From assembly GCA_002269645.1 (NCBI GenBank), contig NIVC01001142.1, positions 1 through 35,252 of the forward strand: DNA of 35,252 nt, written 5' to 3'. The DNA is from Macrostomum lignano (Eukaryota). Positions within the stretch are counted from its first letter, which is position 1, and every line of letters starts with the position of its first letter. This document shows, one piece after another, positions 1-31,008 of this stretch. A program made the translations under genes and the position numbers. Under the pieces are notes generated by a model. That model was given only the letters and a program-made list of their open reading frames with translations, had not been told where the DNA came from and did not search any database.

Positions 1-716
1 CTTAAGCTCGCGGCCCGTCTGCATGGCCAGCAACTGGTACATGGCACAGCGCTCCAAGTAGTAGGAGTAGTGGAAGATGGCCGCGGTTTCCGCTAGCACC
101 AGGTAGCCGTGGTTGGCCATCATCAGGCAGGTCTTGTCAGGTGCCAGGCAGGAAGCCAGCCGAGCGCCCTCTGAGTCCTGGACGGAGACGCCGCTGTAGT
201 CCAGATCGTAGGCAATGCTGTTGAGAAAGTACAGGCAGTTCTGGTGCACCATGCGCAGTCGGGAGTCTGCAGGGCAGCTGAGGGCGGTGGCGTACGGGAC
301 TGTGCAGGTGGAAGACCGCCTTGGCCTCGGGCCGGGCCTCGTGCAGCGGTCGGTGGATTGTGGCCGCGGACGTCTCGGCGCGACCGTTGCCCTCCACCCG
401 ACCTGCAGCGTCGAGGCCGACCAGGTCGGAGGCACGCACGCGGACCAGTGCAGGCCGTAGGGCACCAGCAGCATCAGCTCGGCTCCGGAGCCGTCAGCCG
501 ATGGCGTCATCAGGCTGAGATGGTTGCAGATGCCCTCGTTGTAGCCCAGCTGGTCCAGGGCCCTGTAGGCTGCCGCCAGGTCCACCCGGGCCTGCCAGTT
601 CTGCTGAGCCGCTGTTGTGGCACCCCGGTTCCCGCTGAGCTGGCGGATGCGAAGGCCACCGGCTGCAGCAGCAGGCGGCACCGCGTCCAGCCATTGCGTA
701 CTGCTACAGTCAACAT
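1..716 (-). CDS. Class II aldolase/adducin N-terminal-domain protein, intronless in the visible part, 3' end beyond the window edge; three apparent 1-bp indels
   Basis: Joining frames at ~660, ~442 and ~297 gives MLTVAVRNGWTRCRLLLQP..LRIRQLSG..NWQARVDLAAAYRALDQLGYNEGICNHLSLMTP..VPYGLHWSRVRASDL..TIHRPLHEARPEAKAVFHLHSPYATALS..MVHQNCLYF..IAYDLDYSG..GARLASCL..LMMANHGYLV..YYLERCAMYQLLAMQTGRELK. The HxH and NHG metal-binding histidines are typical of the family. The Arg-rich N-terminus resembles a mitochondrial presequence. Confidence 0.85.
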
Positions 717-4860: not shown

Positions 4861-5054
4861 GCCCGCGATCGCGCCAGCAGAAGCCGCTAGCCTCCGTCTG
4901 AGGCGCCCGCGATCGCGCCAGCAGAAGCCGCTAGTCTCCATCTGAGGCGCCCGCGATCGCGCCAGCAGAAGCCGCTAGCCTCCGTCTGAGGCGCCCGCGA
5001 TCGCGCCAGCAGAAGCCGCTAGTCTCCGTCTAAGGCGCCCGAGATGGCGCCAGC
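4861..5054 (+). repeat. 44-bp tandem repeat (4 units plus a partial) in the 5' leader of GluCl exon A; the last partial unit contains the ATG
   Basis: Unit gcccgcgatcgcgccagcagaagccgctagcctccgtctgaggc starts at 4861, 4905, 4949 and 4993. At 5037 it reads gcccgagATGgcgccagc. Confidence 0.95.
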
Positions 5055-5987
5055 GCGGCTGCTCCTGGTTCTGTTGGCCGTTCTGCTGGCCTGGGTGCAG
5101 GTTGCGGACTGCGGCGCCGCACCCAACTACACGAACATCGTGGACCGCATCGTGTTCCACATCTTCCGCGGCTACAACAAACACCAGCGGCCCGTGCCCG
5201 CTAGCCGGCAGAAGCCAGACGGCACCATAGAAGAGGATTCGACCGACGTGGACGTCAACATGAAGATTCTCAGCATCAACAAGGTGGACGTCATCAACAT
5301 GGAGTTTACGCTGGACATGTACCTGCGTCAGTTCTGGAAGGACACGCGGCTGCGCTGGGATCATTACAAAGACTTCAGTTTCTACAACGAGTCCATCGCC
5401 ATCCCCGCCAAGAAGGAGCACCTGTGGCTTCCAGACCTGTTCTTCCGTAATGGAAAGGAGGGTTACCTGCACAAAATGACTCAGCCTAACTATCTGATCA
5501 GAGTTGAGCCCGACGGGCAGATCCTGTATTCGCAGAAGGTTACCATGAAGTTCTCGTGCCAGATGCAGTTGCAGACATTTCCCATGGACACGCAGACGTG
5601 CTTCGTGAACATCGGCAGCTACGGATACACCACGAGGAACCTGCTGTTCAAGTGGAAGCGGGACGGGCTGAAAGACCCGGTGGAGCTGGACGGCTCCATG
5701 CAGATTTCCGAGTTCAACGCGCCCGACTTTGCTGAGAGCCACGACTGCACGCAGGGCAGCGCGACCAGCACAGGGAGCTACGCGTGCCTGAAGGCGATCT
5801 TCAAGCTGGAGCGGCAGCTGGGCAGCTACCTGTCCGGTACCTACATCCCTGCCATCCTCATCGTGGCGGTCTCTTGGCTCAACTTCTGGATCAGTATTGA
5901 AGCCGTGCCAGCCAGGGTCTCCCTGGGCCTGCTCACCCTGCTGGGCATCCTCACCCAGGGCATGTCAGTCATCAACAACCTGCCCAG
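5044..5987 (+). CDS. GluCl: Cys-loop ligand-gated chloride channel (GluCl-like) exon A: signal peptide, extracellular domain, M1-M2; ends at a phase-2 donor with no private M3-M4 exon visible
   Basis: Signal peptide MAPARLLLVLLAVLLAW; loop D YLRQFW; loop A WLPDLFFRN; Cys-loop CQMQLQTFPMDTQTC; loop B GSYGY; loop C C..TGSYAC; anion-filter PAR. Donor CAG|GTAGGC at 5987/5988. Confidence 0.92.
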
Positions 5988-6943
5988 GTAGGCCATTCTT
6001 AGTCAGCTGTTTTCAAGAAAATTGAGGTTACTTTTCTTTCTTAATTGGTGCCCTTTTTGAGCATTTGACGGCTCACTGAAAGTGCCCATCCAGTCTGCTC
6101 ACTGCGGTCTCTCATGCCAGTTTTCAGTCTTGCCCTGTCAGCAAGTCATGCGCCCGTTTCGCGGGCTCAGGCCCAGAGCTTGTGGTGCTCAGCTCACCGA
6201 TATCTAGAAATCCAGCTCCTCTCCGCTTACTCACCCAGCCTCTCTCGGCATCTTCATTCCCTCCTCAATCCGCGGCTGCATAAGTTCAGAAGCGACCCTA
6301 ATCCTCAGGCTGAGCCTTCTTTCTCACGGGACAGGTGAAGAGAGCCCACCAGTGCGATCTCAAATCATTATTTATGCAAGCCAGGTGGGCCGCCCGAATC
6401 CCAGCTGTAGGCGGTCAGAAAGCCGCGCCCTGCGCCGGACTGTCGCCGGAAACGGCCCAGTTTCTCCATAAATGCATCAAAACAGCCAAGCTCAGTTTTT
6501 TCATCTGGCCTCTGCAAGCCTTTGAGGAGCTTTTCCTCTACAAAGACACAAGCTTCAAGACGCATTCGCTTCTTGAGTGCCTTCTGAACATGCAGGCTGA
6601 CGGCTGTTGCGATTGCCTATTAATTTCAGCTCCGATGAGAACTGTGCTCAAAGCCCCGCTTTTCATCTTTTAATATCCGAATCCCCTTTGAGGGCCTCTT
6701 TTTCGAGAAGAGGCAGGGAAAGCTCAGGCCAGATTATCCCCTTGGCTCCGTCATGGCGCTCTCCTAATCCGTCTTGTGCGGGATCAGAGCGGTGGGATCT
6801 GAAACTCCTTGCCGATTTCTCTGCGCCGTTAAAATCCAGACGCCAATTATGTTCACTTTTCATCCCACATCATCTCTCACGCACCATCCTATGTTTGCAT
6901 CCCCTTCTCCCGTCTCCTGCATCTCCTCTCCCTGCCTCTCCCG

Positions 6944-7166
6944 CATCTCATCACACTCTCCTCACTCCACCATCTCATCACACTCTGCTCACTCCACCAT
7001 CTCATCACACTCTGCTCACCCCACCATCTCATCACACTGCTCACTGCTCCATCTCATCACACTCTGCTCATTCCACCATCTCATCACACTCTGCTCATTC
7101 CACCATCTCATCACACTGCTCACTGCTCCATCTCATCACACTCTGCTCACTGCTCCATCTCATCAC
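6944..7166 (+). repeat. ~27-bp CA-rich minisatellite, ~8 units, downstream of the exon A donor
   Basis: Unit ccaccatctcatcacactctgctcact with variants. Confidence 0.9.
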
Positions 7167-8164
7167 TTCTTCCCGTCTCACTATAGCTTCCCACCACCTT
7201 GCAAAGTCTAAGCAGCTGCAAGCTCACACAACAGGAGTGGCGCACAGGGCAGAGTGTACTTTGTGGTGGCGTTGGTTTCGGTAACTGCGGGCTTTGACTT
7301 GCGCAGCCTCCAAAATCAGTGGCGATGCACTCTAAATCATTTAGAATTTGAAAAGCTGTCTCTGTTACTCTGTTGCCATTTATTCCTACCTGTTCTCGTG
7401 ACAGGGTCGCATGAACTGCAAATATTCCAAAAGCAACTTCACACCTCTTCAAAGCTATGGGACTCGTTGCTCTGGATTAAAATAGACGAGAACCACTAGC
7501 AAAACGTTTCCCCAAAAATCCTTGAAGAAAGTGCTCACTATGTAGGAGCTGTTTCGCTTTTGAGCTTAAAATGAGAATGACAACATCCATTGGTTCAGTC
7601 CCTGTCCCAATGGATTCAACTCTCCTTTCACCCTGATTTTTAATCCCCGGGCACTCAATAAGCGACGAGATTCGACATGGAATTCAAGACCCGGGCCAGT
7701 TTTGCACCGACTACGGTACAGCAGCTGCAAACTGCTGTTTCATGCATCAGTTCGACCACAGGTCAATAATCATGAATTTATGAAATGCTCAATCAGCCCG
7801 TGCGCAAAATGAAGTACATTGGAATAAGCTCAACTGTACCGCTCTAGCCAAAGCCTAGCCAATTATCGAAATTAAACAGCAAGTAGTTCGTTGAAGAAAG
7901 CAAAGTCCTACTCATGCACTCTGCCTGTGTGAGCTGGACTGCTCAGAATGAAGCATTTCAATGCTTCCTACTGAAGTCCCCTGAGCCACCGGCTTTGCTA
8001 CTCATTCTACTGTAAGTAGTCTGCTTGGTTGAAAATTCACTGGATTTTTAAATGCACCAGCGTGTAAGAAGCTCAATTTTTAGTTAAAGGCTTGCGCGGA
8101 CCATTCAGATATGGAATTTTTTTTTATTTTTCAAAGAGGAAGGTTTGACTCTCCGACGATTCTT

Positions 8165-9377
8165 ACAGTGTTCAGGTCTATGATTGTGTGCTGTGCACAG
8201 TGTTCCATGTCTATGGTTTTGTGCTGTACACAGTGTTCCATATCTATGATTGTGTGCTGTACACAGTGTTCCATGTCTATGGTTGCGTGCTGTACACAGT
8301 GTTCCATGTCTATGGTTGCGTGCTGTACACAGTGTTCCATGTCTATGGTTGCGTGCTGTACACAGTGTTCCATGTCTATGGTTGTGTGCTGTGCACAGTG
8401 TTCCATGTCTATGGTTGTGTGCTGTGCACAGTGTTCGATGTCTATGGTCGGTTGTGTGCTGTACGAGTACACAGTGTTCCATGTATATGATTGCGTGCTG
8501 TACACAGTGTTCCATGTCTATGGTTGTGTGCTGTACACAGTGTTCCATGTCTATGGTTGTGTGCTGTGCACAGTGTTCTATGTCTATGGTTGTGTGCTGT
8601 GCACAGTGTTCCATGTCTATGGTCGGTTGTGTGCTGTACGAGTACACAGTGTTCCATGTATATGGTTGCGTGCTGTACACAGTGTTCCATGTCTATGGTT
8701 GTGTGCTGTACACAGTGTTCCATGTCTATGGTTGTGTGCTGTGCACAGTGTTCTATGTCTATGGTCGGTTGTGTGCTGTTCGAGTACACAGTGTTCCATG
8801 TCTATGGTTGTGTGCTGTACACTGTTCCAGGTCTATGATTGTGTGCTGTACACAGTGTTCCATGTCTATGTTTGCGTGCTGTACACAGTGTTCCATGTCT
8901 ATGGTTGTGTGCTGTACACAGTGTTCCATGTCTATGGTTGTGTGCTGTACACTGTTCCAGGTCTATGGTTTTGTGCTGTACACAGTGTTCCATGTCTATG
9001 GTTGTGTGCTGTACACAGTGTTCCATGTTTATGATTGTGTGCTGTACACTGTTCCATGTCTATGGTTGTGTGCTGTGCACAGTGTTCCATGTCTATGATT
9101 GTGTGCTGTACACTGTTCCAGGTCTATGATTGTGTGCGGTGCACAGTGTTCCATGTCTATGGTTGTGTGCTGTACACAGTGTTCCATGTCTATGATTGTG
9201 TGCTGTACACAGTGTTCCATGTCTATGATTGTGTGCTGTACACAGTGTTCCATGTCTATGGTTGCGTGCTGTACACAGTGTTCCATGTCTATGGTTGCGT
9301 GCTGTACACAGTGTTCCATGTCTATGGTTGCGTGCTGTACACAGTGTTCCAGGTCTATGGTTATGTTCTGTACTCAG
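8165..9377. repeat. 33-bp minisatellite, first copy
   Basis: Unit tgtgtgctgtacacagtgttccatgtctatggt with shorter and longer variants. It explains the many low-complexity ORFs here. Confidence 0.97.
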
Positions 9378-10200
9378 CTCTTCGGTTGAGCTGCAGATCA
9401 TTTAGAAAATTAAATTCAATTAAGTAATTTGCTTAGCAGAAGCTCCTCAAAACCCGGTCCCCAGGAACCCAGGTGTGGAACAGGCTGATGAGCTGCAGGT
9501 CCAACACCGGCAAAAGTCGGTTCAGTCTCTCTCGCATCGACAGTCGCCCAGCCCTGAATTGGTGCCAAATTGCTCGACAATTTGCTCCAGCGGGGATCGC
9601 ATGCGCCAAATTGATTAAAGTAATATGGGAGCTTTTTGGCCGAATCCAGTCAGACCCGGAGTTGCTGAGCGCAGATAAGAGAGGCTGGGCTGAGCTGCAG
9701 CTCACCACTCAGAGTGAGGAAGTGGCAGTGCGGACTCACTCTGCTGCTGTTGTCTGCCTGGCAGCGGTGGGGCTCTAATGGCCGGCCGGTGTGGCTGCTG
9801 ACAATGCGGGGCAGAGGCCAGGGATAATGAAACCGGGTCGGGGCAGGCCGGATTAAAGCCGGCTCGCCGAGCCGCTGCGGTCATTGGCTACCAAAGGCCA
9901 GGGAAGAGAATGAGCGGGAGAGGAAAATGGGAAGCGGATAAGAGTGTTGTTTGCGCGAGACTGATCCCCAGAACAGATATAGGAAATACTCAAATAGCGA
10001 CTGCAGCCCCGCATGTCCTCCTGGCTCACCGCTACCGGCATTTGAGCTGGGAGCTAAGCTGCTCTGCTCCCATTAGCCCGGGCTGGCAGGTGCTGACAAT
10101 TCCTGCTCCCAGCCTCGCACTTGCTGGGATAGCCGCTCCCAGGAGAGCGCAGAGACAGCCGGAGAGAAGAGCATCGAGAGCCAGCCATAGGCCGATCGCG

Positions 10201-11195
10201 ATGCACTTTTGGTGCCGCCTGCTGCCCGCCCTGCTGGCGGTCGCTGCTGTGTTCGCCACCGAGGAGATTCAGCCGACCAGCGGGTCGGTTCGGCCGAACT
10301 ACACCAACATCGTGGACCGCATCGTGGAGGCGATCTTCCGCGGCTACAATAAGCACCAGCGGCCGGTGGAGATGCCGCCGAAGCCGGACGGCCAGCCGGC
10401 TGAGCCCGCCCCAGACGTGTCCGGCTCCAGCAAGCCGGTGCAGCCATCCACGGCCGTGGACGTCAACATGAAGATTCTCAGCATCAACAAGGTGGACGTC
10501 ATCAACATGGAGTTTACGCTGGACATGTACCTGCGTCAGTTCTGGAAGGACACGCGGCTGCGCTGGGATCATCGCAAAGACTTCAGTTTCTACAACGAGT
10601 CCATCGCCATCCCCGCCAAGAAGGAGCACCTGTGGCTTCCAGACCTGTTCTTCCGTAATGGAAAGGAGGGTTACCTGCACAAAATGACTCAGCCTAACTA
10701 TCTGATCAGAGTTGAGCCCGACGGGCAGATTCTGTATTCGCAGAAGGTGACCATGAAGTTCTCGTGCCAGATGCAGTTGCAGACGTTTCCCATGGACACG
10801 CAGACGTGCTTCGTGAACATCGGCAGCTACGGATACACCACGAGGAACCTGCTGTTCAAGTGGAAGCGGGACGGGCTGAAAGACCCGGTGGAGCTGGACG
10901 GCTCCATGCAGATTTCCGAGTTCAACACACCCGACTTCGCCATTGTGGAGGACTGCACGCAGGGCAGCGCGACCAGCACAGGGAGCTACGCGTGCCTGAA
11001 GGCGATCTTCAAGCTGGAGCGGCAGCTGAGCAGCTACCTGGCTGGCACCTACATCCCCGCCATCCTCATCATTGCCGTCAGCTGGCTCAGCTTCTGGGTC
11101 AATATAGAAGCCGTGCCCGCTCGAGTTACGCTGGGCCTGCTCACCCTGTTGGGTATCCTCACCCAGGCATCCACCGTGATGGCCAACCTGCCCAG
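10201..11195 (+). CDS. GluCl: GluCl-like subunit B, exon 1 (signal peptide, extracellular domain, M1-M2)
   Basis: The ATG at 10201 begins the signal peptide MHFWCRLLPALLAVAAVFA; the upstream ATG at 9910 in the ORF track gives no signal peptide. Same Cys-loop motifs as exon A. Donor CAG|GTAGGG at 11195/11196. Confidence 0.93.
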
Positions 11196-11279
11196 GTAGG
11201 GACTGCAGACTCTCCTAGGCATCTACCTTGATGGCCAATCTGCCCAAGTAGCAGGTGCTGATACAACAGGAGGAGGGGG

Positions 11280-12032
11280 CTGCAGGTCTCACACAGGTCT
11301 GCAGCTCTCACACAGGTAGGAGGGACTGCAGGTCTCACACAGTTCTGCAGGTCTCACACAGTTCTGCAGGTCTCACACAGTTCTGCAGGTCTCACACAGT
11401 TGTGCAGGTCTCACTCAGGTCTGCAGGTCTCACACAGGTCTGCAGGTCTCACTCAGGTCTGCAGGTCTCACACAGGTCTGCAGGTCTCACACAGGTCTGC
11501 AGGTCTCACTCAGGTCTGCAGGTCTCACACAGTTCTGCAGGTCTCACACAGTTCTGCAGGTCTCACACAGTTCTGCAGGTCTCACACAGGTCTGCAGGTC
11601 TCACACAGTTCTGCAGGTCTCACACAGGTCTGCAGGTCTCACACAGTTCTGCAGGTCTCACACAGTTCTGCAGGTCTCACACAGTTCTGCAGGTCTCACA
11701 CAGTTCTGCAGGTCTCACACAGTTGTGCAGGTCTCACTCAGGTCTGCAGGTCTCACACAGGTCTGCAGGTCTCACTCAGGTCTGCAGGTCTCACACAGGT
11801 CTGCAGGTCTCACACAGGTCTGCAGGTCTCACTCAGGTCTGCAGGTCTCACACAGTTCTGCAGGTCTCACACAGTTCTGCAGATCTCACACAGTTCTGCA
11901 GGTCTCACACAGGTCTGCAGGTCTCAAACAGGTCTGCAGGTCTCACACAGTTCTGCAGGTCTCACACAGGTCTGCAGGTCTCACACAGGTCTGCAGGTCT
12001 CACACAGGTCTGCAGGTCTCACACAGTTCTGC
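11280..12032 (+). repeat. 19-bp intronic minisatellite, ~39 units
   Basis: Unit ctgcaggtctcacacag(t/g)t. Confidence 0.97.
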
Positions 12033-12817
12033 TACAAAGTGATTAATCAAATTAATCTCCTTTTCCGACTGTTTTAAGCGACCGCTAACTTCACACAAAG
12101 GGTGCCCGATTAAAGAAGTCTTGACTGTTCGCCTCAATGAGTAATAAAGAATCTGGGCAAGGATCGAGGGTGAGGCCGGTGAGATCAAAGTCCTCACGGA
12201 GCCTTGGCGCCGGCGAGTCCGGGCTGAGCAGTTCTCATTAGCACTGGCTGCCAGATCTCGCTGGCTGATTAAAGACTGCTAAAAACTCAATTTTATCGCC
12301 CACGGCACGAGTCCGGGGAGTCTCTGGGGCTGCTGCGGGGTTGATGGGGCTGCCAGCACTCTGGGCTGAGCTGCTCAGTCTGGCTTAATCCTGGTCCTAT
12401 CGCTGAGTTCGGCAGAAAGTGCAGAATGAGGGCGTCATAAATCCCCTCCGCTGAGCTCAGATTAAGTGTCTAAGCTGCTTCTCCCTGTGGCTCCGTCAGC
12501 TTTCAAGCCTGCTTGCGGTGGTGGCTCCTGATTTATGGAGCAGGGCTGGGCCTAAGCAGCCTCAGGAGTCACTCACTTTGCTCAGTTTGCCTTCTCAATT
12601 CGCCCTATGCCCAGAAATGTTTCTACAAGGACCGCGTCGCGGCAGGCCAATTTGCAGAGGAGAGATGGGAATTTTCAACTCCAAGATTTTGCTGATTTTT
12701 GCAAACTTCGAAACTGATAAACTTGAGAATGCAACACTGCTAATTTTTTCGAGGTTGTTTTGAAAAAAGCAGAAAATATCAAACAGGGCTCTGCAGTGCC
12801 TTTTTTATTCAGTCTAC

Positions 12818-12849
12818 CTGACTAACCCTCCGCCCCGCCGCCTTCACAG
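12818..12849 (+). promoter_or_regulatory. Branch point and 3' splice site of the M3-M4 exon
   Basis: ctgACTAAC at 12818-12826, then a C-rich tract and cacAG ending at 12849. The duplicated copy is at 18796-18827. Confidence 0.75.
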
Positions 12850-13330
12850 GGTTGCCTACATCAAGGCCATCGACATCTGGATCATCGCCAGCATCATGTT
12901 CGTCATCGGCGCCCTCATCGAGTTCGCCGTGGCCTCCTTCCGGGCGCGGCGCACCAAGATGGAGAGCTGGCAGCAGGAGATCCGCAACGTCGTCCGCTCC
13001 GAGCTGCAACGCCTCGCCGTCATCCGCGGCCCGCCGCCCGGCCTGCCGTGCGGCCACATCGGCGGCGGCCACGGCTATCCCGGCTTCCCGGAGGAGCTCG
13101 AGGATCTCCTGGCTGTCAGCGTCGAGGAGGGCGGCGTCGGCGGCGGCGTCAGTGGCGGCGGCAAAGGCGGCGCGCCGCCAGCCTCGCCAGTGCCCGCGCC
13201 GGACTCGGACATCGACGCGTACAGCCGCTTCCTGTTTCCCGCCTGCTTCCTGCTGTACAACTGCTTCTACTGGCTGTACTACCTGGTGCTGGTGGTCAAG
13301 ATCAACCCGCCGAAGGCCGAGGCCAAGTAG
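12850..13330 (+). CDS. GluCl: GluCl-like exon 2 (M2-M3 linker, M3, intracellular loop, M4, stop); joined to B exon 1 gives a 491-aa subunit
   Basis: The splice restores LPR-VAYIKAIDIWIIASIMFVIGALIEF. M4 reads DIDAYSRFLFPACFLLYNCFYWLYYL. TAG at 13328-13330; 995+481 = 1476 nt. Confidence 0.93.
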
Positions 13331-14376
13331 CCGCTGCCGCCATCTGCCAGGTGACTTCAGATGACCTCTCCGTCTTTGCAGGGATGACAGCCGTTTAACA
13401 GTCGTTTAACAGCCTTCTACTTCTGCAGCTTTGGGAGTAGTGCGGAAATCAATGTGGCTGGCTGACTTGAATGGCTTCTCACTGATCTGTTTGAATGCTC
13501 CCCGAGTCCCGCTCCAGAATTTGAGTTTAACTGTATTCGAAATGGCGCCCAGTCCAATGAATGGGGTTTGAAGGCTGTTCATGCCCGTTCTGCCGCTCAC
13601 CTCTCTGTTGCTGTTAAATCGCATAAAAGTACACCCCAGTCGCTGTTAAATTAAAACAAATCCAGTTTTGTTAGGCGACTCTCCCGTGCTGACTTTGGAT
13701 GGCGCGAATTTCTGTAGCGAGCTGCGTTTTGTTTGGCGTCGCGCTTTTTTGGCTGCCACGAGCGCAGGTTTGCTAATGCGCACGAGCACCCTGCATGCGT
13801 ATGCAGCCCCTCTCCAATAACTGCATGCATCTGTTGATTAGCTGTGCTGATTGTAGCAAATGCTTCACTTATTCTATTCAAATTGTATTGTCAGTCCCCA
13901 TCCCAACTTGCTAATTATTGAAGCCCTTTCTATCAGGCAGACACTGAGGACAAAAATATATTTCGCTCGCTCTGATTCGCGATATAAATGCACATTTAAT
14001 TAGCCGCTGTCATGGAATTGATTTTCGCTGTTCTACCAAAATCATGGCGTTCGTTTTATGCTTCTAATATGTTTTACTTCTTTGCTGCTTTAAAGGCTAA
14101 AGGCAAAGATATGTGCGGCCGTTCCGCTGTACGCAGATGCCCTTATTGCAGGGTGCACAGCCGCCATGGCTTGATATTGTGTAGCTGGGGTGCGCTCGTC
14201 GCCTCCACAGCCGAGCCCTGGTCCGCTGGCTCGTGTTCGATAGGCTACTAACCTAAAGGCTTGTAAAACGCGTTTGGTTAGTCTTTGGCCATAGACATCT
14301 CAGCGGGCGGGCTGCTGTAGGCTGACCCGTAGGCTGACTAAACACTACTGTCTATGGCCATAACTGCTGTACTGTA

Positions 14377-15334
14377 TGTGTGCTGTACGAGTACACAGTG
14401 TTCCATGTATATGATTGCGTGCTGTACACAGTGTTCCATGTCTATGGTTGTGTGCTGTACACAGTGTTCCATGTCTATGGTTGTGTGCTGTGCACAGTGT
14501 TCTATGTCTATGGTTGTGTGCTGTGCACAGTGTTCCATGTCTATGGTCGGTTGTGTGCTGTACGAGTACACAGTGTTCCATGTATATGGTTGCGTGCTGT
14601 ACACAGTGTTCCATGTCTATGGTTGTGTGCTGTACACAGTGTTCCATGTCTATGGTTGTGTGCTGTGCACAGTGTTCTATGTCTATGGTCGGTTGTGTGC
14701 TGTTCGAGTACACAGTGTTCCATGTCTATGGTTGTGTGCTGTACACTGTTCCAGGTCTATGATTGTGTGCTGTACACAGTGTTCCATGTCTATGTTTGCG
14801 TGCTGTACACAGTGTTCCATGTCTATGGTTGTGTGCTGTACACAGTGTTCCATGTCTATGGTTGTGTGCTGTACACAGTGTTCCATGTCTATGGTTGTGT
14901 GCTGTACACTGTTCCAGGTCTATGGTTTTGTGCTGTACACAGTGTTCCATGTCTATGGTTGTGTGCTGTACACAGTGTTCCATGTTTATGATTGTGTGCT
15001 GTACACTGTTCCATGTCTATGGTTGTGTGCTGTGCACAGTGTTCCATGTCTATGATTGTGTGCTGTACACTGTTCCAGGTCTATGATTGTGTGCGGTGCA
15101 CAGTGTTCCATGTCTATGGTTGTGTGCTGTACTCAGTGTTCCATGTCTATGATTGTGTGCTGTACACAGTGTTCCATGTCTATGATTGTGTGCTGTACAC
15201 AGTGTTCCATGTCTATGGTTGCGTGCTGTACACAGTGTTCCATGTCTATGGTTGCGTGCTGTACACAGTGTTCCATGTCTATGGTTGCGTGCTGTACACA
15301 GTGTTCCAGGTCTATGGTTATGTTCTGTACTCAG
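14377..15334. repeat. 33-bp minisatellite, second copy (5'-truncated relative to the first)
   Basis: Same unit and variant order as 8453-9377, with one extra unit. Confidence 0.97.
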
Positions 15335-16157
15335 CTCTTCGGTTGAGCTGCAGATCATTTAGAAAATTAAATTCAATTAAGTAATTTGCTTAGCAGAAGC
15401 TCCTCAAAACCCGGTCCCCAGGAACCCAGGTGTGGAACAGGCTGATGAGCTGCAGGTCCAACACCGGCAAAAGTCGGTTCAGTCTCTCTCGCATCGACAG
15501 TCGCCCAGCCCTGAATTGGTGCCAAATTGCTCGACAATTTGCTCCAGCGGGGATCGCATGCGCCAAATTGATTAAAGTAATATGGGAGCTTTTTGGCCGA
15601 ATCCAGTCAGACCCGGAGTTGCTGAGCGCAGATAAGAGAGGCTGGGCTGAGCTGCAGCTCACCACTCAGAGTGAGGAAGTGGCAGTGCGGACTCACTCTG
15701 CTGCTGTTGTCTGCCTGGCAGCGGTGGGGCTCTAATGGCCGGCCGGTGTGGCTGCTGACAATGCGGGGCAGAGGCCAGGGATAATGAAACCGGGTCGGGG
15801 CAGGCCGGATTAAAGCCGGCTCGCCGAGCCGCTGCGGTCATTGGCTACCAAAGGCCAGGGAAGAGAATGAGCGGGAGAGGAAAATGGGAAGCGGATAAGA
15901 GTGTTGTTTGCGCGAGACTGATCCCCAGAACAGATATAGGAAATACTCAAATAGCGACTGCAGCCCCGCATGTCCTCCTGGCTCACCGCTACCGGCATTT
16001 GAGCTGGGAGCTAAGCTGCTCTGCTCCCATTAGCCCGGGCTGGCAGGTGCTGACAATTCCTGCTCCCAGCCTCGCACTTGCTGGGATAGCCGCTCCCAGG
16101 AGAGCGCAGAGACAGCCGGAGAGAAGAGCATCGAGAGCCAGCCATAGGCCGATCGCG

Positions 16158-17152
16158 ATGCACTTTTGGTGCCGCCTGCTGCCCGCCCTGCTGGCGGTCG
16201 CTGCTGTGTTCGCCACCGAGGAGATTCAGCCGACCAGCGGGTCGGTTCGGCCGAACTACACCAACATCGTGGACCGCATCGTGGAGGCGATCTTCCGCGG
16301 CTACAATAAGCACCAGCGGCCGGTGGAGATGCCGCCGAAGCCGGACGGCCAGCCGGCTGAGCCCGCCCCAGACGTGTCCGGCTCCAGCAAGCCGGTGCAG
16401 CCATCCACGGCCGTGGACGTCAACATGAAGATTCTCAGCATCAACAAGGTGGACGTCATCAACATGGAGTTTACGCTGGACATGTACCTGCGTCAGTTCT
16501 GGAAGGACACGCGGCTGCGCTGGGATCATCGCAAAGACTTCAGTTTCTACAACGAGTCCATCGCCATCCCCGCCAAGAAGGAGCACCTGTGGCTTCCAGA
16601 CCTGTTCTTCCGTAATGGAAAGGAGGGTTACCTGCACAAAATGACTCAGCCTAACTATCTGATCAGAGTTGAGCCCGACGGGCAGATTCTGTATTCGCAG
16701 AAGGTGACCATGAAGTTCTCGTGCCAGATGCAGTTGCAGACATTTCCCATGGACACGCAGACGTGCTTCGTGAACATCGGCAGCTACGGATACACCACGA
16801 GGAACCTGCTGTTCAAGTGGAAGCGGGACGGGCTGAAAGACCCGGTGGAGCTGGACGGCTCCATGCAGATTTCCGAGTTCAACACACCCGACTTCGCCAT
16901 TGTGGAGGACTGCACGCAGGGCAGCGCGACCAGCACAGGGAGCTACGCGTGCCTGAAGGCGATCTTCAAGCTGGAGCGGCAGCTGAGCAGCTACCTGGCT
17001 GGCACCTACATCCCCGCCATCCTCATCATTGCCGTCAGCTGGCTCAGCTTCTGGGTCAATATAGAAGCCGTGCCCGCTCGAGTTACGCTGGGCCTGCTCA
17101 CCCTGTTGGGTATCCTCACCCAGGCATCCACCGTGATGGCCAACCTGCCCAG
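16158..17152 (+). CDS. GluCl: GluCl-like subunit C, exon 1 (duplicate of B)
   Basis: Same translation as B in the ORF track. One synonymous difference noticed (ACA at 16742 vs ACG at 10785). Donor at 17152/17153. Confidence 0.9.
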
Positions 17153-17236
17153 GTAGGGACTGCAGACTCTCCTAGGCATCTACCTTGATGGCCAATCTGC
17201 CCAAGTAGCAGGTGCTGATACAACAGGAGGAGGGGG

Positions 17237-18008
17237 CTGCAGGTCTCACACAGGTCTGCAGCTCTCACACAGGTAGGAGGGACTGCAGGTCTCACACAGT
17301 TCTGCAGGTCTCACACAGTTCTGCAGGTCTCACACAGTTCTGCAGGTCTCACACAGTTGTGCAGGTCTCACTCAGGTCTGCAGGTCTCACACAGGTCTGC
17401 AGGTCTCACTCAGGTCTGCAGGTCTCACACAGGTCTGCAGGTCTCACACAGGTCTGCAGGTCTCACTCAGGTCTGCAGGTCTCACACAGTTCTGCAGGTC
17501 TCACACAGTTCTGCAGGTCTCACACAGTTCTGCAGGTCTCACACAGGTCTGCAGGTCTCACACAGTTCTGCAGGTCTCACACAGGTCTGCAGGTCTCACA
17601 CAGTTCTGCAGGTCTCACACAGTTCTGCAGGTCTCACACAGTTCTGCAGGTCTCACACAGTTCTGCAGGTCTCACACAGTTCTGCAGGTCTCACACAGTT
17701 GTGCAGGTCTCACTCAGGTCTGCAGGTCTCACACAGGTCTGCAGGTCTCACTCAGGTCTGCAGGTCTCACACAGGTCTGCAGGTCTCACACAGGTCTGCA
17801 GGTCTCACTCAGGTCTGCAGGTCTCACACAGTTCTGCAGGTCTCACACAGTTCTGCAGATCTCACACAGTTCTGCAGGTCTCACACAGGTCTGCAGGTCT
17901 CAAACAGGTCTGCAGGTCTCACACAGTTCTGCAGGTCTCACACAGGTCTGCAGGTCTCACACAGGTCTGCAGGTCTCACACAGGTCTGCAGGTCTCACAC
18001 AGTTCTGC
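17237..18008 (+). repeat. 19-bp intronic minisatellite, second copy (one unit longer)
   Basis: Offset to copy 1 changes from 5957 to 5976 across the array. Confidence 0.96.
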
Positions 18009-18827
18009 TACAAAGTGATTAATCAAATTAATCTCCTTTTCCGACTGTTTTAAGCGACCGCTAACTTCACACAAAGGGTGCCCGATTAAAGAAGTCTTGA
18101 CTGTTCGCCTCAATGAGTAATAAAGAATCTGGGCAAGGATCGAGGGTGAGGCCGGTGAGATCAAAGTCCTCACGGAGCCCTTGGCGCCGGCGAGTCCGGG
18201 CTGAGCAGTTCTCATTAGCACTGGCTGCCAGATCTCGCTGGCTGATTAAAGACTGCTAAAAACTCAATTTTATCGCCCACGGCACGAGTCCGGGGAGTCT
18301 CTGGGGCTGCTGCGGGGTTGATGGGGCTGCCAGCACTCTGGGCTGAGCTGCTCAGTCTGGCTTAATCCTGGTCCTATCGCTGAGTTCGGCAGAAAGTGCA
18401 GAATGAGGGCGTCATAAATCCCCTCCGCTGAGCTCAGATTAAGTGTCTAAGCTGCTTCTCCCTGTGGCTCCGTCAGCTTTCAAGCCTGCTTGCGGTGGTG
18501 GCTCCTGATTTATGGAGCAGGGCTGGGCCTAAGCAGCCTCAGGAGTCACTCACTTTGCTCAGTTTGCCTTCTCAATTCGCCCTATGCCCCAGAAATGTTT
18601 CTACAAGGACCGCGTCGCGGCAGGCCAATTTGCAGAGGAGAGATGGGAATTTTCAACTCCAAGATTTTGCTGATTTTTGCAAACTTCGAAACTGATAAAC
18701 TTGAGAATGCAACACTGCTAATTTTTTCGAGGTTGTTTTGAAAAAAGCAGAAAATATCAAACAGGGCTCTGCAGTGCCTTTTTTATTCAGTCTACCTGAC
18801 TAACCCTCCGCCCCGCCGCCTTCACAG

Positions 18828-19308
18828 GGTTGCCTACATCAAGGCCATCGACATCTGGATCATCGCCAGCATCATGTTCGTCATCGGCGCCCTCATCGAG
18901 TTCGCCGTGGCCTCCTTCCGGGCGCGGCGCACCAAGATGGAGAGCTGGCAGCAGGAGATCCGCAACGTCGTCCGCTCCGAGCTGCAACGCCTCGCCGTCA
19001 TCCGCGGCCCGCCGCCCGGCCTGCCGTGCGGCCACATCGGCGGCGGCCACGGCTATCCCGGCTTCCCGGAGGAGCTCGAGGATCTCCTGGCTGTCAGCGT
19101 CGAGGAGGGCGGCGTCGGCGGCGGCGTCAGTGGCGGCGGCAAAGGCGGCGCGCCGCCAGCCTCGCCAGTGCCCGCGCCGGACTCGGACATCGACGCGTAC
19201 AGCCGCTTCCTGTTTCCCGCCTGCTTCCTGCTGTACAACTGCTTCTACTGGCTGTACTACCTGGTGCTGGTGGTCAAGATCAACCCGCCGAAGGCCGAGG
19301 CCAAGTAG
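18828..19308 (+). CDS. GluCl: GluCl-like exon 2 duplicate (M3-M4)
   Basis: Acceptor cacAG at 18826-18827. Translation matches 12850-13330. Confidence 0.9.
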
Positions 19309-21155
19309 CCGCTGCCGCCATCTGCCAGGTGACTTCAGATGACCTCTCCGTCTTTGCAGGGATGACAGCCGTTTAACAGTCGTTTAACAGCCTTCTACTT
19401 CTGCAGCTTTGGGAGTAGTGCGGAAATCAATGTGGCTGGCTGACTTGAATGGCTTCTCACTGATCTGTTTGAATGCTCCCCGAGTCCCGCTCCAGAATTT
19501 GAGTTTAACTGTATTCGAAATGGCGCCCAGTCCAATGAATGGGGTTTGAAGGCTGTTCATGCCCGTTCTGCCGCTCACCTCTCTGTTGCTGTTAAATCGC
19601 ATAAAAGTACACCCCAGTCGCTGTTAAATTAAAACAAATCCAGTTTTGTTAGGCGACTCTCCCGTGCTGACTTTGGATGGCGCGAATTTCTGTAGCGAGC
19701 TGCGTTTTGTTTGGCGTCGCGCTTTTTTGGCTGCCACGAGCGCAGGTTTGCTAATGCGCACGAGCACCCTGCATGCGTATGCAGCCCCTCTCCAATAACT
19801 GCATGCATCTGTTGATTAGCTGTGCTGATTGTAGCAAATGCTTCACTTATTCTATTCAAATTGTATTGTCAGTCCCCATCCCAACTTGCTAATTATTGAA
19901 GCCCTTTCTATCAGGCAGACACTGAGGACAAAAATATATTTCGCTCGCTCTGATTCGCGATATAAATGCACATTTAATTAGCCGCTGTCATGGAATTGAT
20001 TTTCGCTGTTCTACCAAAATCATGGCGTTCGTTTTATGCTTCTAATATGTTTTACTTCTTTGCTGCTTTAAAGGCTAAAGGCAAAGATATGTGCGGCCGT
20101 TCCGCTGTACGCAGATGCCCTTATTGCAGGGTGCACAGCCGCCATGGCTTGATATTGTGTAGCTGGGGTGCGCTCGTCGCCTCCACAGCCGAGCCCTGGT
20201 CCGCTGGCTCGTGTTCGATAGGCTACTAACCTAAAGGCTTGTAAAACGCGTTTGGTTAGTCTTTGGCCATAGACATCTCAGCGGGCGGGCTGCTGTAGGC
20301 TGACCCGTAGGCTGACTAAACACTACTGTCTATGGCCATAACTGCACCAAATGCAAGTCTTTTGTGCAGTGTGGCTTGAACCTGATGAAGTTGGCCATGG
20401 ACAGCACAGAATTCTTATTGCATTTCAGCCTCAGATTAGACAACAAGGATTTAAGTTAGCATCCAGAGAGACCAGTGTCTCTGAACCTTACTGTAAGAAT
20501 TAAAACAGAATATTTGTTTACACTGATGTCGTAGAAATGTTCTGCCTAAGCAGATGTTCTGCCTCAGCTGCACAGACTACAGTGCAAATCTATTTCACAG
20601 CATACGCATTAGCCCACTGGGTAAGTTCAGAATGTTCTTTAAAACGCAGTTCTCAAAGCTTCACCAAATGTGCAGGAAAAGTTGATCCAGTTTTACCTTC
20701 AATGCTGCTCATTGGAATCAATATTTTAAAGCGGGTTGCGGGTCTGTGGCACGGCCGAGTGATGAATAATTCCTGCTTTGCGTTTGTTTTGAGCCTCGGC
20801 TACCCGCAATTATTGCTGCACCGTGAGAGTCCCAGCGGGGATGTTGCTAGGCTTGGGGCTGTCAGCGGAGTTCCACACACAGTTGCTGGACTCGCGGCAC
20901 ATCAAGAGCTCACCCGACCGAGGCGCTGCGCACTGGGCCGACGCCGCCGCCTCCCCCCCCCCCGGTTCGCTCGAAAAGATCGGAATGGACTGACCAATTT
21001 GCTGGGACTGCCTGAGTGCTCGCTCAGTGACAGGCCGGGTGCCTCTGGCCTGAGTCGGACTGAGTTCGCGAATCTGAGCACTGGCTGAGCTCTTGAAGTA
21101 GCTGTAACAAGGTCTCACTGCTGATGACGCCCGGGTTGTATCAGAGTCTGGCCAT

Positions 21156-30460: not shown

Positions 30461-31008
30461 TCAATCGTCATCTTGCACGTGCGCCTCTGTCGCCAGGCAA
30501 CGCGGCCGGCCAGCCCGCGGGCACCGCCGGACATGCTTCTCCAGCGTGCTGGACACGATGAGCGGAGCGCCGCAGTAGCGGCAGGAGAAGCCGGCGCTGG
30601 CGGTGTTGCTGGAGCTGGCGGTTCCGCCGTGGGTTCGCATGTGGCGGGTGAGCTTGCTGCTCTGGGCGCAGGCGTAGCCGCACAGCTGGCAACGGTAGGG
30701 CTGCTCGCCCGTGTGGCTGCGGCGGTGCACGGTGAGGTTGGAGCAGTTGTTGAACAGCTTGCCGCAGAACTCGCACCGGTTCGAGCGGCGGCGGGGCGCC
30801 GGCTTCGGCGGGGTTGGCGGCCTCGGCAGTGACGGCGGCGATGGCAGCGACGGGGGCGGCAGCTGCGGCAGCGGTGTTAAAGGAGGCGATGAAGGATCTG
30901 ACGGAGACGGCGGAGGCAGAAAATTCGGTGGAGTCGGCAGCTGCCAGGAGGCTGGGTGGTGCAGCGCACCGCCGCAAGTTGGGCTGACCATCAGCGGCTC
31001 CCGCAGCT
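30461..31008 (-). CDS. BCL11: BCL11-type C2H2 zinc-finger transcription factor, terminal exon with the C-terminal three-finger cluster
   Basis: [50 protein letters not shown] followed by [21 protein letters not shown] matches the diagnostic BCL11A/B C-terminal fingers. Acceptor ccgcAG at 31009-31010; stop at 30461. Confidence 0.88.

What the first reader, a model, noticed from the sequence alone, without database searches (positions are those of the whole stretch)
5044..13330. Candidate protocadherin-like 'variable first exon + shared constant exon' chloride-channel locus
Seen: exon A (5044-5987) and B exon 1 (10201-11195) each encode a complete signal peptide, ligand-binding domain, M1 and pore-lining M2. 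Both end at the same phase-2 donor (..NLPR, CAG|GTAG). I found no M3-M4 exon (YIKAID.W, ID..SR..FP) between 5988 and 10200. The only downstream M3-M4 exons are 12850-13330 and its duplicate at 18828. A joined to 12850 is in frame (944+481 = 1425 nt, 474 aa). Exon A has an intact ORF. Known: clustered protocadherins and UGT1A use promoter choice among large first exons spliced to shared constant exons; I am not aware of this design for a Cys-loop receptor, but cannot search. Inference: one locus could make subunits with different pores (2'/16'/20' residues S/M/N in A, T/S/A in B) on a shared M3-M4.
Basis: partly seen in the sequence, partly recalled or inferred. Interest (0 to 1): 0.85.

Follow-up and report, generated by a model that had tools for sequence, protein, structure and literature searches.

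The report
Flatworm chloride-channel gene with alternative first exons

Summary
The window is the whole contig NIVC01001142.1 of the M. lignano Mlig_3_7 assembly. Exon A (5044-5987) and exon B (10201-11195, copy at 16158-17152) each encode signal peptide, ligand-binding domain, M1 and M2, and end at the same phase-2 CAG|GTAGG donor. The only M3-M4 exons are C (12850-13330) and its identical copy C' (18828-19308).

The predicted A+C protein (474 aa) is already in GenBank (PAA70662.1/PAA71747.1). That annotation was built only from transcripts.

A is under purifying selection (6 synonymous, 0 nonsynonymous changes against a 2-3% diverged sister copy), and so are B and C. No B+C product is deposited anywhere, so sharing of exon C by both first exons is inferred, not shown.

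The locus has only two first-exon types. The second B-C unit is a 99.9% identical recent duplicate that is absent from a sister copy. A 472-nt gene-conversion tract homogenises the cores of A and B, while loop C and M1-M2 stay different.

Verdict: a real, partly documented alternative-first-exon design, unusual for a Cys-loop receptor. The protocadherin comparison overstates it.

The parts
4861..5054 (+). 44-bp tandem repeat (4.4 copies) that runs into the start codon of exon A. The upstream copies carry ATC where the last copy has ATG.
5044..5987 (+). First exon A: ATG, signal peptide, ligand-binding domain (Cys-loop C-x13-C and loop-C Cys pair), M1, M2 (PARVSLGLLTLLGILTQGMSVINNLPR). It ends two bases into a codon. 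This is the annotated first CDS exon of BOX15_Mlig000841.
   Evidence: 6 synonymous/0 nonsynonymous vs L001
5988..5992 (+). 5' splice site GTAGG of exon A. The intron's first codon completes AGG-TAG, so an unspliced message would end at ..NLPR*.
5247..5718 (+). Gene-conversion tract in A: 472 nt with only 5 differences from B 10455-10926. It is followed by a divergent loop-C island (5719-5742, 11 differences) and another identical block (5743-5820).
5988..10200 (+). Spacer between A and B, which is the 5' part of the A intron. It has no M3-M4 relic and no AATAAA. It contains a 27-bp minisatellite (6944-7166), a 33-bp minisatellite (8165-9377) and the region upstream of B.
10201..11195 (+). First exon B: own ATG and signal peptide, 17 residues longer at the N-terminus, M2 PARVTLGLLTLLGILTQASTVMANLPR, same phase-2 donor. 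83.9% protein identity to A.
   Evidence: 13 synonymous/2 nonsynonymous among 4 copies
11196..12849 (+). B-C intron, with a 19-bp minisatellite (11280-12032, 39 copies, unit CTGCAGGTCTCACACAGGT).
12850..13330 (+). Constant exon C: completes the Arg codon, then M2-M3 loop (VAYIKAIDIW), M3, cytoplasmic loop, M4 and stop. An ATTAAA lies at 13650.
8467..14367 (+). Tandem unit 1 (minisatellite, B upstream region, B, intron, C, downstream sequence).
   Evidence: 98.5% overall; 99.9% outside minisatellites
14424..20345 (+). Tandem unit 2, a recent copy of unit 1.
16158..17152 (+). First exon B' (1 synonymous difference from B).
18828..19308 (+). Constant exon C' (identical to C). This is the exon to which the GenBank annotation joins exon A on this contig.

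Best explanation
This is a two-exon gene for an anion-selective Cys-loop receptor subunit of the flatworm GluCl (SmGluCl-2-like) clade in Macrostomum lignano. Its first exon exists in two diverged versions, A and B, arranged in tandem upstream of one kind of last exon, C. Each first exon carries a start codon, signal peptide, ligand-binding domain, M1, M2 and a 5' splice site, but no 3' splice site. Exon C carries the only suitable 3' splice site and supplies M3, the cytoplasmic loop and M4. Transcripts that start at A read through B, and the A donor pairs with the acceptor of C or of its copy C', giving a 474-aa subunit; this step is documented by the public transcript-based annotation. Transcripts that start at B would give a 491-aa subunit with a different N-terminus, loop C, M1 and outer pore on the same M3-M4; this step is inferred from an intact ORF, the identical donor and purifying selection. 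The arrangement most likely arose by tandem duplication followed by loss, or non-duplication, of A's own 3' exon (inference). Ongoing gene conversion homogenises the cores of A and B. The extra B-C unit on this contig is a very recent structural variant.
For: 1. The exact A+C protein is deposited (PAA70662.1/PAA71747.1).
2. Its gene spans 5044..19308 on this contig and A..C on sister locus L003.
3. The annotation uses only RNA evidence (PMC5730564).
4. In a third copy (L001) the same A donor is annotated as spliced to a cryptic acceptor inside an inserted DIRS-like retroelement. This is independent evidence that the donor is used and that transcription runs kilobases past A.
5. No private M3-M4 exon for A exists in any of the three assembled copies.
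6. Substitutions between 2-3% diverged copies are A 6 synonymous/0 nonsynonymous (p=1.4e-4), B 13/2 (p=3e-7) and C 4/0 (p=4e-3).
7. Within the A-specific segments the count is 4/0, and within the B-specific segments 5/0 (positions).
8. No AATAAA lies between A and B. By a crude pyrimidine-tract filter there are only two acceptor-like sites between the A donor and C, one of them 12850.
9. The A-C junction recreates the family's conserved LPRV(A/S)YIKAIDIW motif.
Against: - No B+C product is deposited in any variant. B is annotated only as a frameshifted 261-aa fragment in L001, so use of C by B is unproven.
- I could not inspect reads.
- A and B share the last 12 nt before the donor, and the annotation pipeline allowed up to 1000 multimapping positions. 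Short-overhang B-C reads could therefore in principle have been assigned to an A-C junction.
- The choice of C' over the nearer, identical C in the annotation is probably arbitrary.
- Separate promoters are not demonstrated.
Confidence: 0.6

Rival explanations
1. Only A-C is a working gene. The B exons, and the first C on this contig, are untranscribed or non-productive duplicates inside its long intron, so nothing is shared.
For: On this contig and on L003 the only called gene is A..C. No B+C protein is deposited. The one B annotation is a frameshifted fragment. Neither the older ML2-based UniProt set nor GenBank contains a B-type protein.
Against: B keeps an intact ORF, start codon, signal peptide and donor in all four copies. 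It shows 13 synonymous against 2 nonsynonymous changes, and 5/0 in the B-specific segments that gene conversion from A cannot maintain. One of the two nonsynonymous changes is itself a conversion from A. A B-containing transcript was assembled at least once, and the L001 gene starts exactly at the B ATG.
Confidence: 0.25
2. B-C is the real gene and A is a leftover 5' fragment. The annotated A-C join is a read-through chimera or a multimapping artefact without function.
For: A has no private 3' exon. A and B share 12 nt before the donor, and the pipeline tolerated massive multimapping. In L001 the A donor is annotated as joined to a retroelement exon that gives a nonsense tail, showing that A can make junk products.
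Against: A shows 0 nonsynonymous against 6 synonymous changes, with synonymous divergence (2.8%) equal to the flanking non-coding divergence (2-3%). A decaying fragment would not look like this. If B-C were the abundant message it should have been assembled and called, yet A-C was called on two contigs and B-C on none.
Confidence: 0.1
3. Assembly error: A's own M3-M4 exon was collapsed or deleted, or the second B-C unit is an assembly artefact.
For: The contig is small (35 kb), rich in minisatellites and comes from a redundant PacBio-based assembly. Units 1 and 2 are 99.9% identical.
Against: Three separately assembled copies (window, L001, L003) are collinear from upstream of A to B and all lack a private exon. 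L001 also shows a two-unit-like layout (minisatellite and B upstream region twice), which supports a real duplication. The artefact question affects only the copy number of B-C, not the A-without-3'-exon layout.
Confidence: 0.05

Closest known systems
Schistosoma mansoni glutamate-gated chloride channels SmGluCl-2/-3 (flatworm GluCl clade; Dufour et al. 2013, PMC3757052)
   Same: Closest characterised relatives: about 50% identity over about 91% of the protein (P0020). They share two Cys loops, the PAR motif before M2 and four TM segments. All the top hits are flatworm proteins.
   Different: [quoted passage not shown] The Macrostomum gene has an intron in the M2-M3 loop, which is what permits exchange of first exons. 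Glutamate gating is not tested here.
Clustered protocadherins / UGT1A (variable first exons spliced to constant exons; from general knowledge)
   Same: The logic is the same. Each variable exon has its own start and a donor but no acceptor, and the constant exon downstream supplies the only acceptor, so an upstream variable exon skips the downstream ones.
   Different: Only two variable exon types rather than 9-50. One constant exon. Joining to the constant exon is documented for A only. No evidence for individual promoters or for stochastic or regulated choice. The variable exon here carries part of the pore, not only an ectodomain.
Nematode unc-49 GABA-receptor locus (several subunits from one gene; Bamber et al. 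1999 from memory; shared and subunit-specific exons shown for Dirofilaria in bioRxiv 10.1101/2025.10.30.685166)
   Same: One Cys-loop receptor locus produces distinct subunits by combining shared and alternative exon blocks.
   Different: The polarity is opposite. In unc-49 the 5' (N-terminal) exons are shared and the 3' blocks with the channel domain alternate. Here the 5' block (binding site, M1, M2) alternates and M3-M4 is shared.
Read-through / conjoined transcripts after partial tandem gene duplication (general knowledge)
   Same: An upstream exon without its own 3' exon splices to the second exon of the downstream paralogue. In copy L001 the same donor instead captures a cryptic acceptor in a retroelement.
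   Different: Such chimeras are usually neutral noise. Here the upstream exon is under strong purifying selection, and A-C is the only product called.

Membership tests
Cys-loop (pentameric) ligand-gated ion channel, anionic GlyR/GluCl/GABA-A branch | Neur_chan_LBD followed by Neur_chan_memb domain | tested here: met
   Pfam E=2e-45 and 1e-26 for A+C, 5e-44 and 4e-27 for B+C. Closest solved structures are GlyR alpha1 (E=5e-73) and GluCl alpha (2e-66).
Cys-loop (pentameric) ligand-gated ion channel, anionic GlyR/GluCl/GABA-A branch | Signature Cys-loop C-x13-C and second Cys pair in loop C | tested here: met
   CQMQLQTFPMDTQTC and DCTQGSATSTGSYAC are present in both A and B.
Cys-loop (pentameric) ligand-gated ion channel, anionic GlyR/GluCl/GABA-A branch | Four transmembrane segments, with Pro-Ala-Arg before M2 (anion selectivity) | tested here: met
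   M1, PAR and M2 are in exon A/B; M3 and M4 are in exon C. The protein is complete only after splicing.
Flatworm GluCl clade (SmGluCl-2-like) | Closest relatives are flatworm GluCl-type subunits | tested here: met
   The top 100 hits are almost all platyhelminth proteins at 42-56% identity, including SmGluCl-2 isoform 2. No phylogenetic tree was built.
Flatworm GluCl clade (SmGluCl-2-like) | Gated by L-glutamate | not testable with these tools
   Needs heterologous expression. Shown for SmGluCl-2.1 and SmGluCl-3 only.
Variable-first-exon / constant-exon locus (protocadherin, UGT1A type) | Tandem variable exons, each with ATG, signal peptide and 5' splice site but no 3' splice site | tested here: met
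   A, B and B' meet this by sequence. There are only two distinct types.
Variable-first-exon / constant-exon locus (protocadherin, UGT1A type) | Every variable exon is found spliced to the same constant exon in mRNA | tested here: inconclusive
   A-C and A-C' are deposited from transcript-based annotation. B-C is absent from the collection in three variants.
Variable-first-exon / constant-exon locus (protocadherin, UGT1A type) | A separate promoter in front of each variable exon, with regulated or stochastic choice | not testable with these tools
   No TSS, RAMPAGE or SL data were accessible. One weak YTNCAG site lies 195 nt upstream of the B ATG.
unc-49-type multi-subunit locus | Shared 5' exons with alternative 3' channel-domain blocks | tested here: not met
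   Here the 5' block alternates and the 3' exon is common.

The most novel reading that the evidence does not exclude
Both first exons are used in vivo, through separate promoters or through a choice between cis-splicing from A and SL trans-splicing onto B. One locus would then supply two subunits that differ in loop C of the binding site, in M1 and in the outer pore, but share M3, the cytoplasmic loop and M4. Gene conversion would keep their cores identical while selection preserves the divergent islands. This would be the first Cys-loop receptor locus with exchangeable 'binding site plus half-pore' modules, the mirror image of unc-49.
Probability: 0.45. Interest if true: 0.6.

Novelty: new variant of a known kind. 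Interest (0 to 1): 0.45.

Why it matters
If both first exons are used, the flatworm diversifies agonist site and pore lining from one locus while keeping the M3-M4 and cytoplasmic-loop module constant. That would be a compact route to receptor diversity not described for this superfamily. It would also be a natural domain-swap experiment on which half of the transmembrane domain sets channel properties.

The locus shows how a single intron makes such modularity possible: the schistosome and tapeworm orthologues checked (SmGluCl-2/-3, one Echinococcus gene) lack this intron. It also shows gene conversion and selection acting side by side.

Practically, it flags that GenBank annotates only A-C' here, skipping three intact, conserved exons. 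It also shows that a retroelement insertion can hijack the A donor in a sister copy.

The A-C product itself is already public, so the new element is the architecture, and half of it (B-C) is still inference.

Tried and rejected
- A hidden or degenerate M3-M4 exon for A: tblastn at E up to 100 found nothing.
- A as a recent segmental copy of B: rejected, because homology is limited to the exon and the flanks are unrelated. The A-type M1-M2 and N-terminus are shared with another paralogue (P0028 cluster).
- The tail of P0001 as evidence for a different 3' exon in the window: it is not encoded here. It lies in a DIRS-like element present only in L001.
- The locus of the A-type paralogue P0028: not on record.
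- Exact look-ups of B+C, the B ORF and guessed versions of the 261-aa B fragment: none found.
- Expression data by gene ID: no mention in full texts. Nothing in the supplements of PMC5816591 or PMC12896417, and no supplements are held for PMC8629364. 'Mlig000841' does occur in the PMC7336406 tables, but with v3 gene numbers (g7-g25) that I could not map to GenBank g2/g5, so I did not use them.
- Rfam on the window: no hits.
- The long ORF upstream of the B ATG (9910-10200): not conserved in L001 or L003, so it is chance.
- Intron-position conservation in a deuterostome homologue: look-up failed.
- A candidate acceptor at 6128 gives a non-homologous reading frame (own translation).
Full report
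**1. What the sequence is**

The window is eukaryotic, GC-rich and full of minisatellites. A protein search with the B+C product returns almost only flatworm Cys-loop receptors. The best hit, P0001, is a GenBank protein of Macrostomum lignano.

A look-up of the gene for protein P0121 returns contig NIVC01001142.1 of assembly GCA_002269645.1 (Mlig_3_7). It is 35,252 bp long, the same length as the window, and the gene coordinates coincide with the window's exon A start and C' stop. The window is therefore that contig.

**2. Checking the observation**

- Exon A (5044-5987) is an intact 944-nt ORF from ATG to ..NLPR with donor CAG|GTAGG.
- Exon B (10201-11195) ends the same way.
- The acceptor ..cacag|G is at 12850 and the stop at 13328-13330.
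- A+C is 1425 nt, 474 aa, in frame; B+C is 491 aa.
- Pfam finds Neur_chan_LBD and Neur_chan_memb in both joined products.
- The closest solved structures are glycine receptor alpha1 and C. elegans GluCl alpha.
- A permissive tblastn with the M3-M4 peptide hits only 12851-13327 and 18829-19305.
- The A and B peptides hit only A, B and B'.

**3. Structure of the locus**

- A 5.9-kb unit (8467-14367) is repeated at 14424-20345.
- Outside the minisatellites the two copies differ by 1 mismatch in 1851 nt, and by 0 mismatches and 2 gaps in 2318 nt.
- B and B' differ by one synonymous base, and C and C' are identical.
- The layout is therefore A, then [B-C], then a very recent second [B'-C'].
- A and B are similar in DNA only within the exon (5122-5992 vs 10294-11200, 87.7%). 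Homology stops 5 nt after the donor and the flanks are unrelated.

**4. Public annotation**

An exact-sequence look-up shows that my conceptual A+C protein is already deposited. It is P0121 = PAA70662.1/PAA71747.1, 'hypothetical protein BOX15_Mlig000841g2/g5'.

On this contig the gene spans 5044..19308. It is the only gene called in the first 29 kb.

A sister locus, L003 on contig NIVC01001215.1, has a single B-C unit. There the same 474-aa product spans A to that single C.

The Mlig_3_7 annotation was made only from RNA evidence. It used STAR/StringTie/TACO assemblies and BLAT-mapped de novo transcripts, with transcript boundaries from spliced-leader and poly(A) reads and ORFs called by TransDecoder (PMC5730564). 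The A-C join therefore rests on transcripts, not on gene prediction.

**5. A third copy gives independent evidence that the A donor is used**

Locus L001, on the same large contig, is 96-98% identical to the window. It carries a 4.2-kb insertion with reverse-transcriptase and tyrosine-recombinase ORFs, i.e. DIRS-like, ending 8 nt before where the first B start codon would be.

There the annotated product P0001 (381 aa) is exon A joined to a 66-aa nonsense tail. The tail is encoded at a ttgcag| acceptor inside the retroelement. It is absent from the window.

So transcription from A proceeds kilobases downstream, and its donor takes the next usable acceptor.

**6. Selection**

The window differs from L001/L003 by 2-3% in non-coding flanks. 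The coding exons show these substitutions between copies:

| Exon | Synonymous | Nonsynonymous | p under neutrality |
|---|---|---|---|
| A | 6 | 0 | 1.4e-4 |
| B (four copies) | 13 | 2 | 3e-7 |
| C | 4 | 0 | 4e-3 |

Synonymous divergence in A is 2.8%. One of the two nonsynonymous changes in B is a conversion to the A codon.

Restricting the count to segments that differ between A and B, and so cannot be rescued by conversion, gives 4/0 for A and 5/0 for B.

Both first exons, including their M1-M2 parts, are therefore maintained as coding sequence. A Cys-loop subunit that stops after M2 lacks half its membrane domain. The simplest way for both exons to be useful is to be joined to C.

**7. Concerted evolution**

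Codon-by-codon comparison shows a 472-nt core (A 5247-5718 = B 10455-10926) with only 5 differences. By contrast, the first about 200 nt carry 83 differences and the last 268 nt carry 46.

Beyond the core's 3' end lies an 11-difference island at loop C (5719-5742..NAPDFAESHDC vs ..NTPDFAIVEDC), followed by a second identical block (5743-5820).

The pattern of differences varies among the homeologous copies, so conversion is ongoing.

The A-type N-terminus and M1-M2 also occur in another M. lignano paralogue (P0028 cluster). A and B are therefore old paralogous exon types whose middle parts have been homogenised. That the divergent islands are kept by selection is my inference.

**8. What is not shown**

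- No B+C protein is in the 15-billion-sequence collection, whether with the window, L001 or L003 version of B.
- B is annotated once, in L001. The gene starts exactly at the B ATG but ends at a +1-frame TGA, implying a 13-nt gap in the mapped transcript. This is weak evidence that B is transcribed at all.
- A and B share the last 12 nt before the donor, and the pipeline kept reads with up to 1000 mapping positions. In principle a short-overhang B-C read could be placed on an A-C junction.
- Against that, B-C was called nowhere and A-C on two contigs.
- The annotation's use of C' rather than the nearer, identical C cannot be discriminated by reads and is probably arbitrary.
- Promoters are untested. 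One YTNCAG motif, the M. lignano trans-splice acceptor consensus, lies 195 nt upstream of the B ATG. That is not evidence for a promoter or for trans-splicing.

**9. Mechanism proposed**

- Shown: exon A is spliced over B to a C exon, giving a complete four-TM subunit.
- Inferred: transcripts beginning at B, or trans-spliced upstream of it, use the same kind of C exon.

First exons have no acceptor, so an upstream first exon automatically skips a downstream one. This is the logic of the protocadherin and UGT1A loci (general knowledge).

The likely origin is tandem duplication, after which A was left without its own 3' exon.

The intron in the M2-M3 loop is what makes this possible. SmGluCl-2/-3 of Schistosoma are single-exon genes, and the Echinococcus orthologue is one uninterrupted 1437-nt ORF.

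**10. Comparison with known systems and novelty**

The protein is a member of the anionic Cys-loop family and of the flatworm GluCl-like clade. It is about 50% identical to SmGluCl-2, and glutamate gating is untested.

The gene architecture works like a minimal variable-first-exon locus but fails or leaves open several defining features of the protocadherin type. It has only two variable types, B-C joining is undocumented, and promoters are unknown.

It is the mirror image of nematode unc-49, where 5' exons are shared and channel-domain blocks alternate (and memory of Bamber et al. 1999).

I found no paper describing this locus or this design in a Cys-loop receptor. The library is incomplete, however.

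The A-C product itself has been public since 2017. I rate the finding a new variant of a known kind, of moderate interest.

**11. Verdict**

The predicted junction and product are real according to transcript-based annotation. Sharing with B is plausible (about 0.6) but unproven. 'Protocadherin-like' overstates a two-type locus whose extra B-C unit is a recent structural variant.

Noticed in passing
L001:16132-20384 (GCA_002269645.1 NIVC01001215.1); insertion point corresponds to window ~10193: A DIRS-like retroelement (SAP-domain gag-like ORF, RVT_1, tyrosine recombinase) replaces the first B-C unit in a sister copy. A cryptic acceptor in it (L001:16314) is annotated as the 3' exon of exon A, giving the 381-aa chimera BOX15_Mlig026840g2.
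   Followed up: yes
window 5719-5742 vs 10927-10950: An island of 11 nucleotide differences at loop C of the binding site, flanked on both sides by sequence that gene conversion has made identical between A and B. This may reflect selection keeping two agonist-site variants apart.
   Followed up: partly
window 4861-5054: A 44-bp tandem repeat (4.4 copies, 94% matches) overlaps the start codon of exon A. Earlier copies read ATC instead of ATG. Copy number differs in L001.
   Followed up: partly
window 11280-12032 and 17237-18010: A 19-bp minisatellite in the B-C intron (about 39 copies, CTGCAGGTCTCACACAGGT). Each unit contains two CAG|GT motifs, so there are dozens of splice-site-like sequences between B and C.
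   Followed up: no
window 8165-9377 and 14391-15337: A 33-bp minisatellite (36 copies) upstream of each B. Unit 1 of the 5.9-kb tandem duplication starts inside the first array (8467), and the junction between units (14368-14423) lies at the start of the second.
   Followed up: partly
NIVC01001215.1 51026-79662 (L003, reversed) and 89717-116230 (L001): Two copies of the whole neighbourhood (glutaredoxin, class II aldolase, channel locus) lie head-to-head on one contig. Their A exons are identical but their B-C structures differ. This is either a real inverted duplication or an assembly chimera.
   Followed up: no
proteins P0028, P0122, P0123 (UniProt, older ML2 assembly): Another M. lignano paralogue has an A-type N-terminus and M1-M2. 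All its predicted forms also stop just after ..NLP(R) with unrelated tails. Its M3-M4 exon may likewise be distant or shared. The locus could not be fetched.
   Followed up: partly
L005:2001-3437 (Echinococcus granulosus) and PMC3757052: The tapeworm orthologue (one Echinococcus gene checked) and schistosome SmGluCl-2/-3 are intronless, so the M2-M3 intron is special to the Macrostomum gene among those checked.
   Followed up: partly
window 30461-30991 (-) and 137-439 (-): A C2H2 zinc-finger ORF and a fragment of a class II aldolase/adducin-domain gene on the minus strand. Much of 21-35 kb is minisatellite arrays (periods of roughly 8-33 bp).
   Followed up: no
window 9910-10200: The reading frame of B is open for 97 codons upstream of its ATG, starting from an in-frame ATG at 9910. 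This extension is not open in L001 or L003, so it is probably chance.
   Followed up: yes
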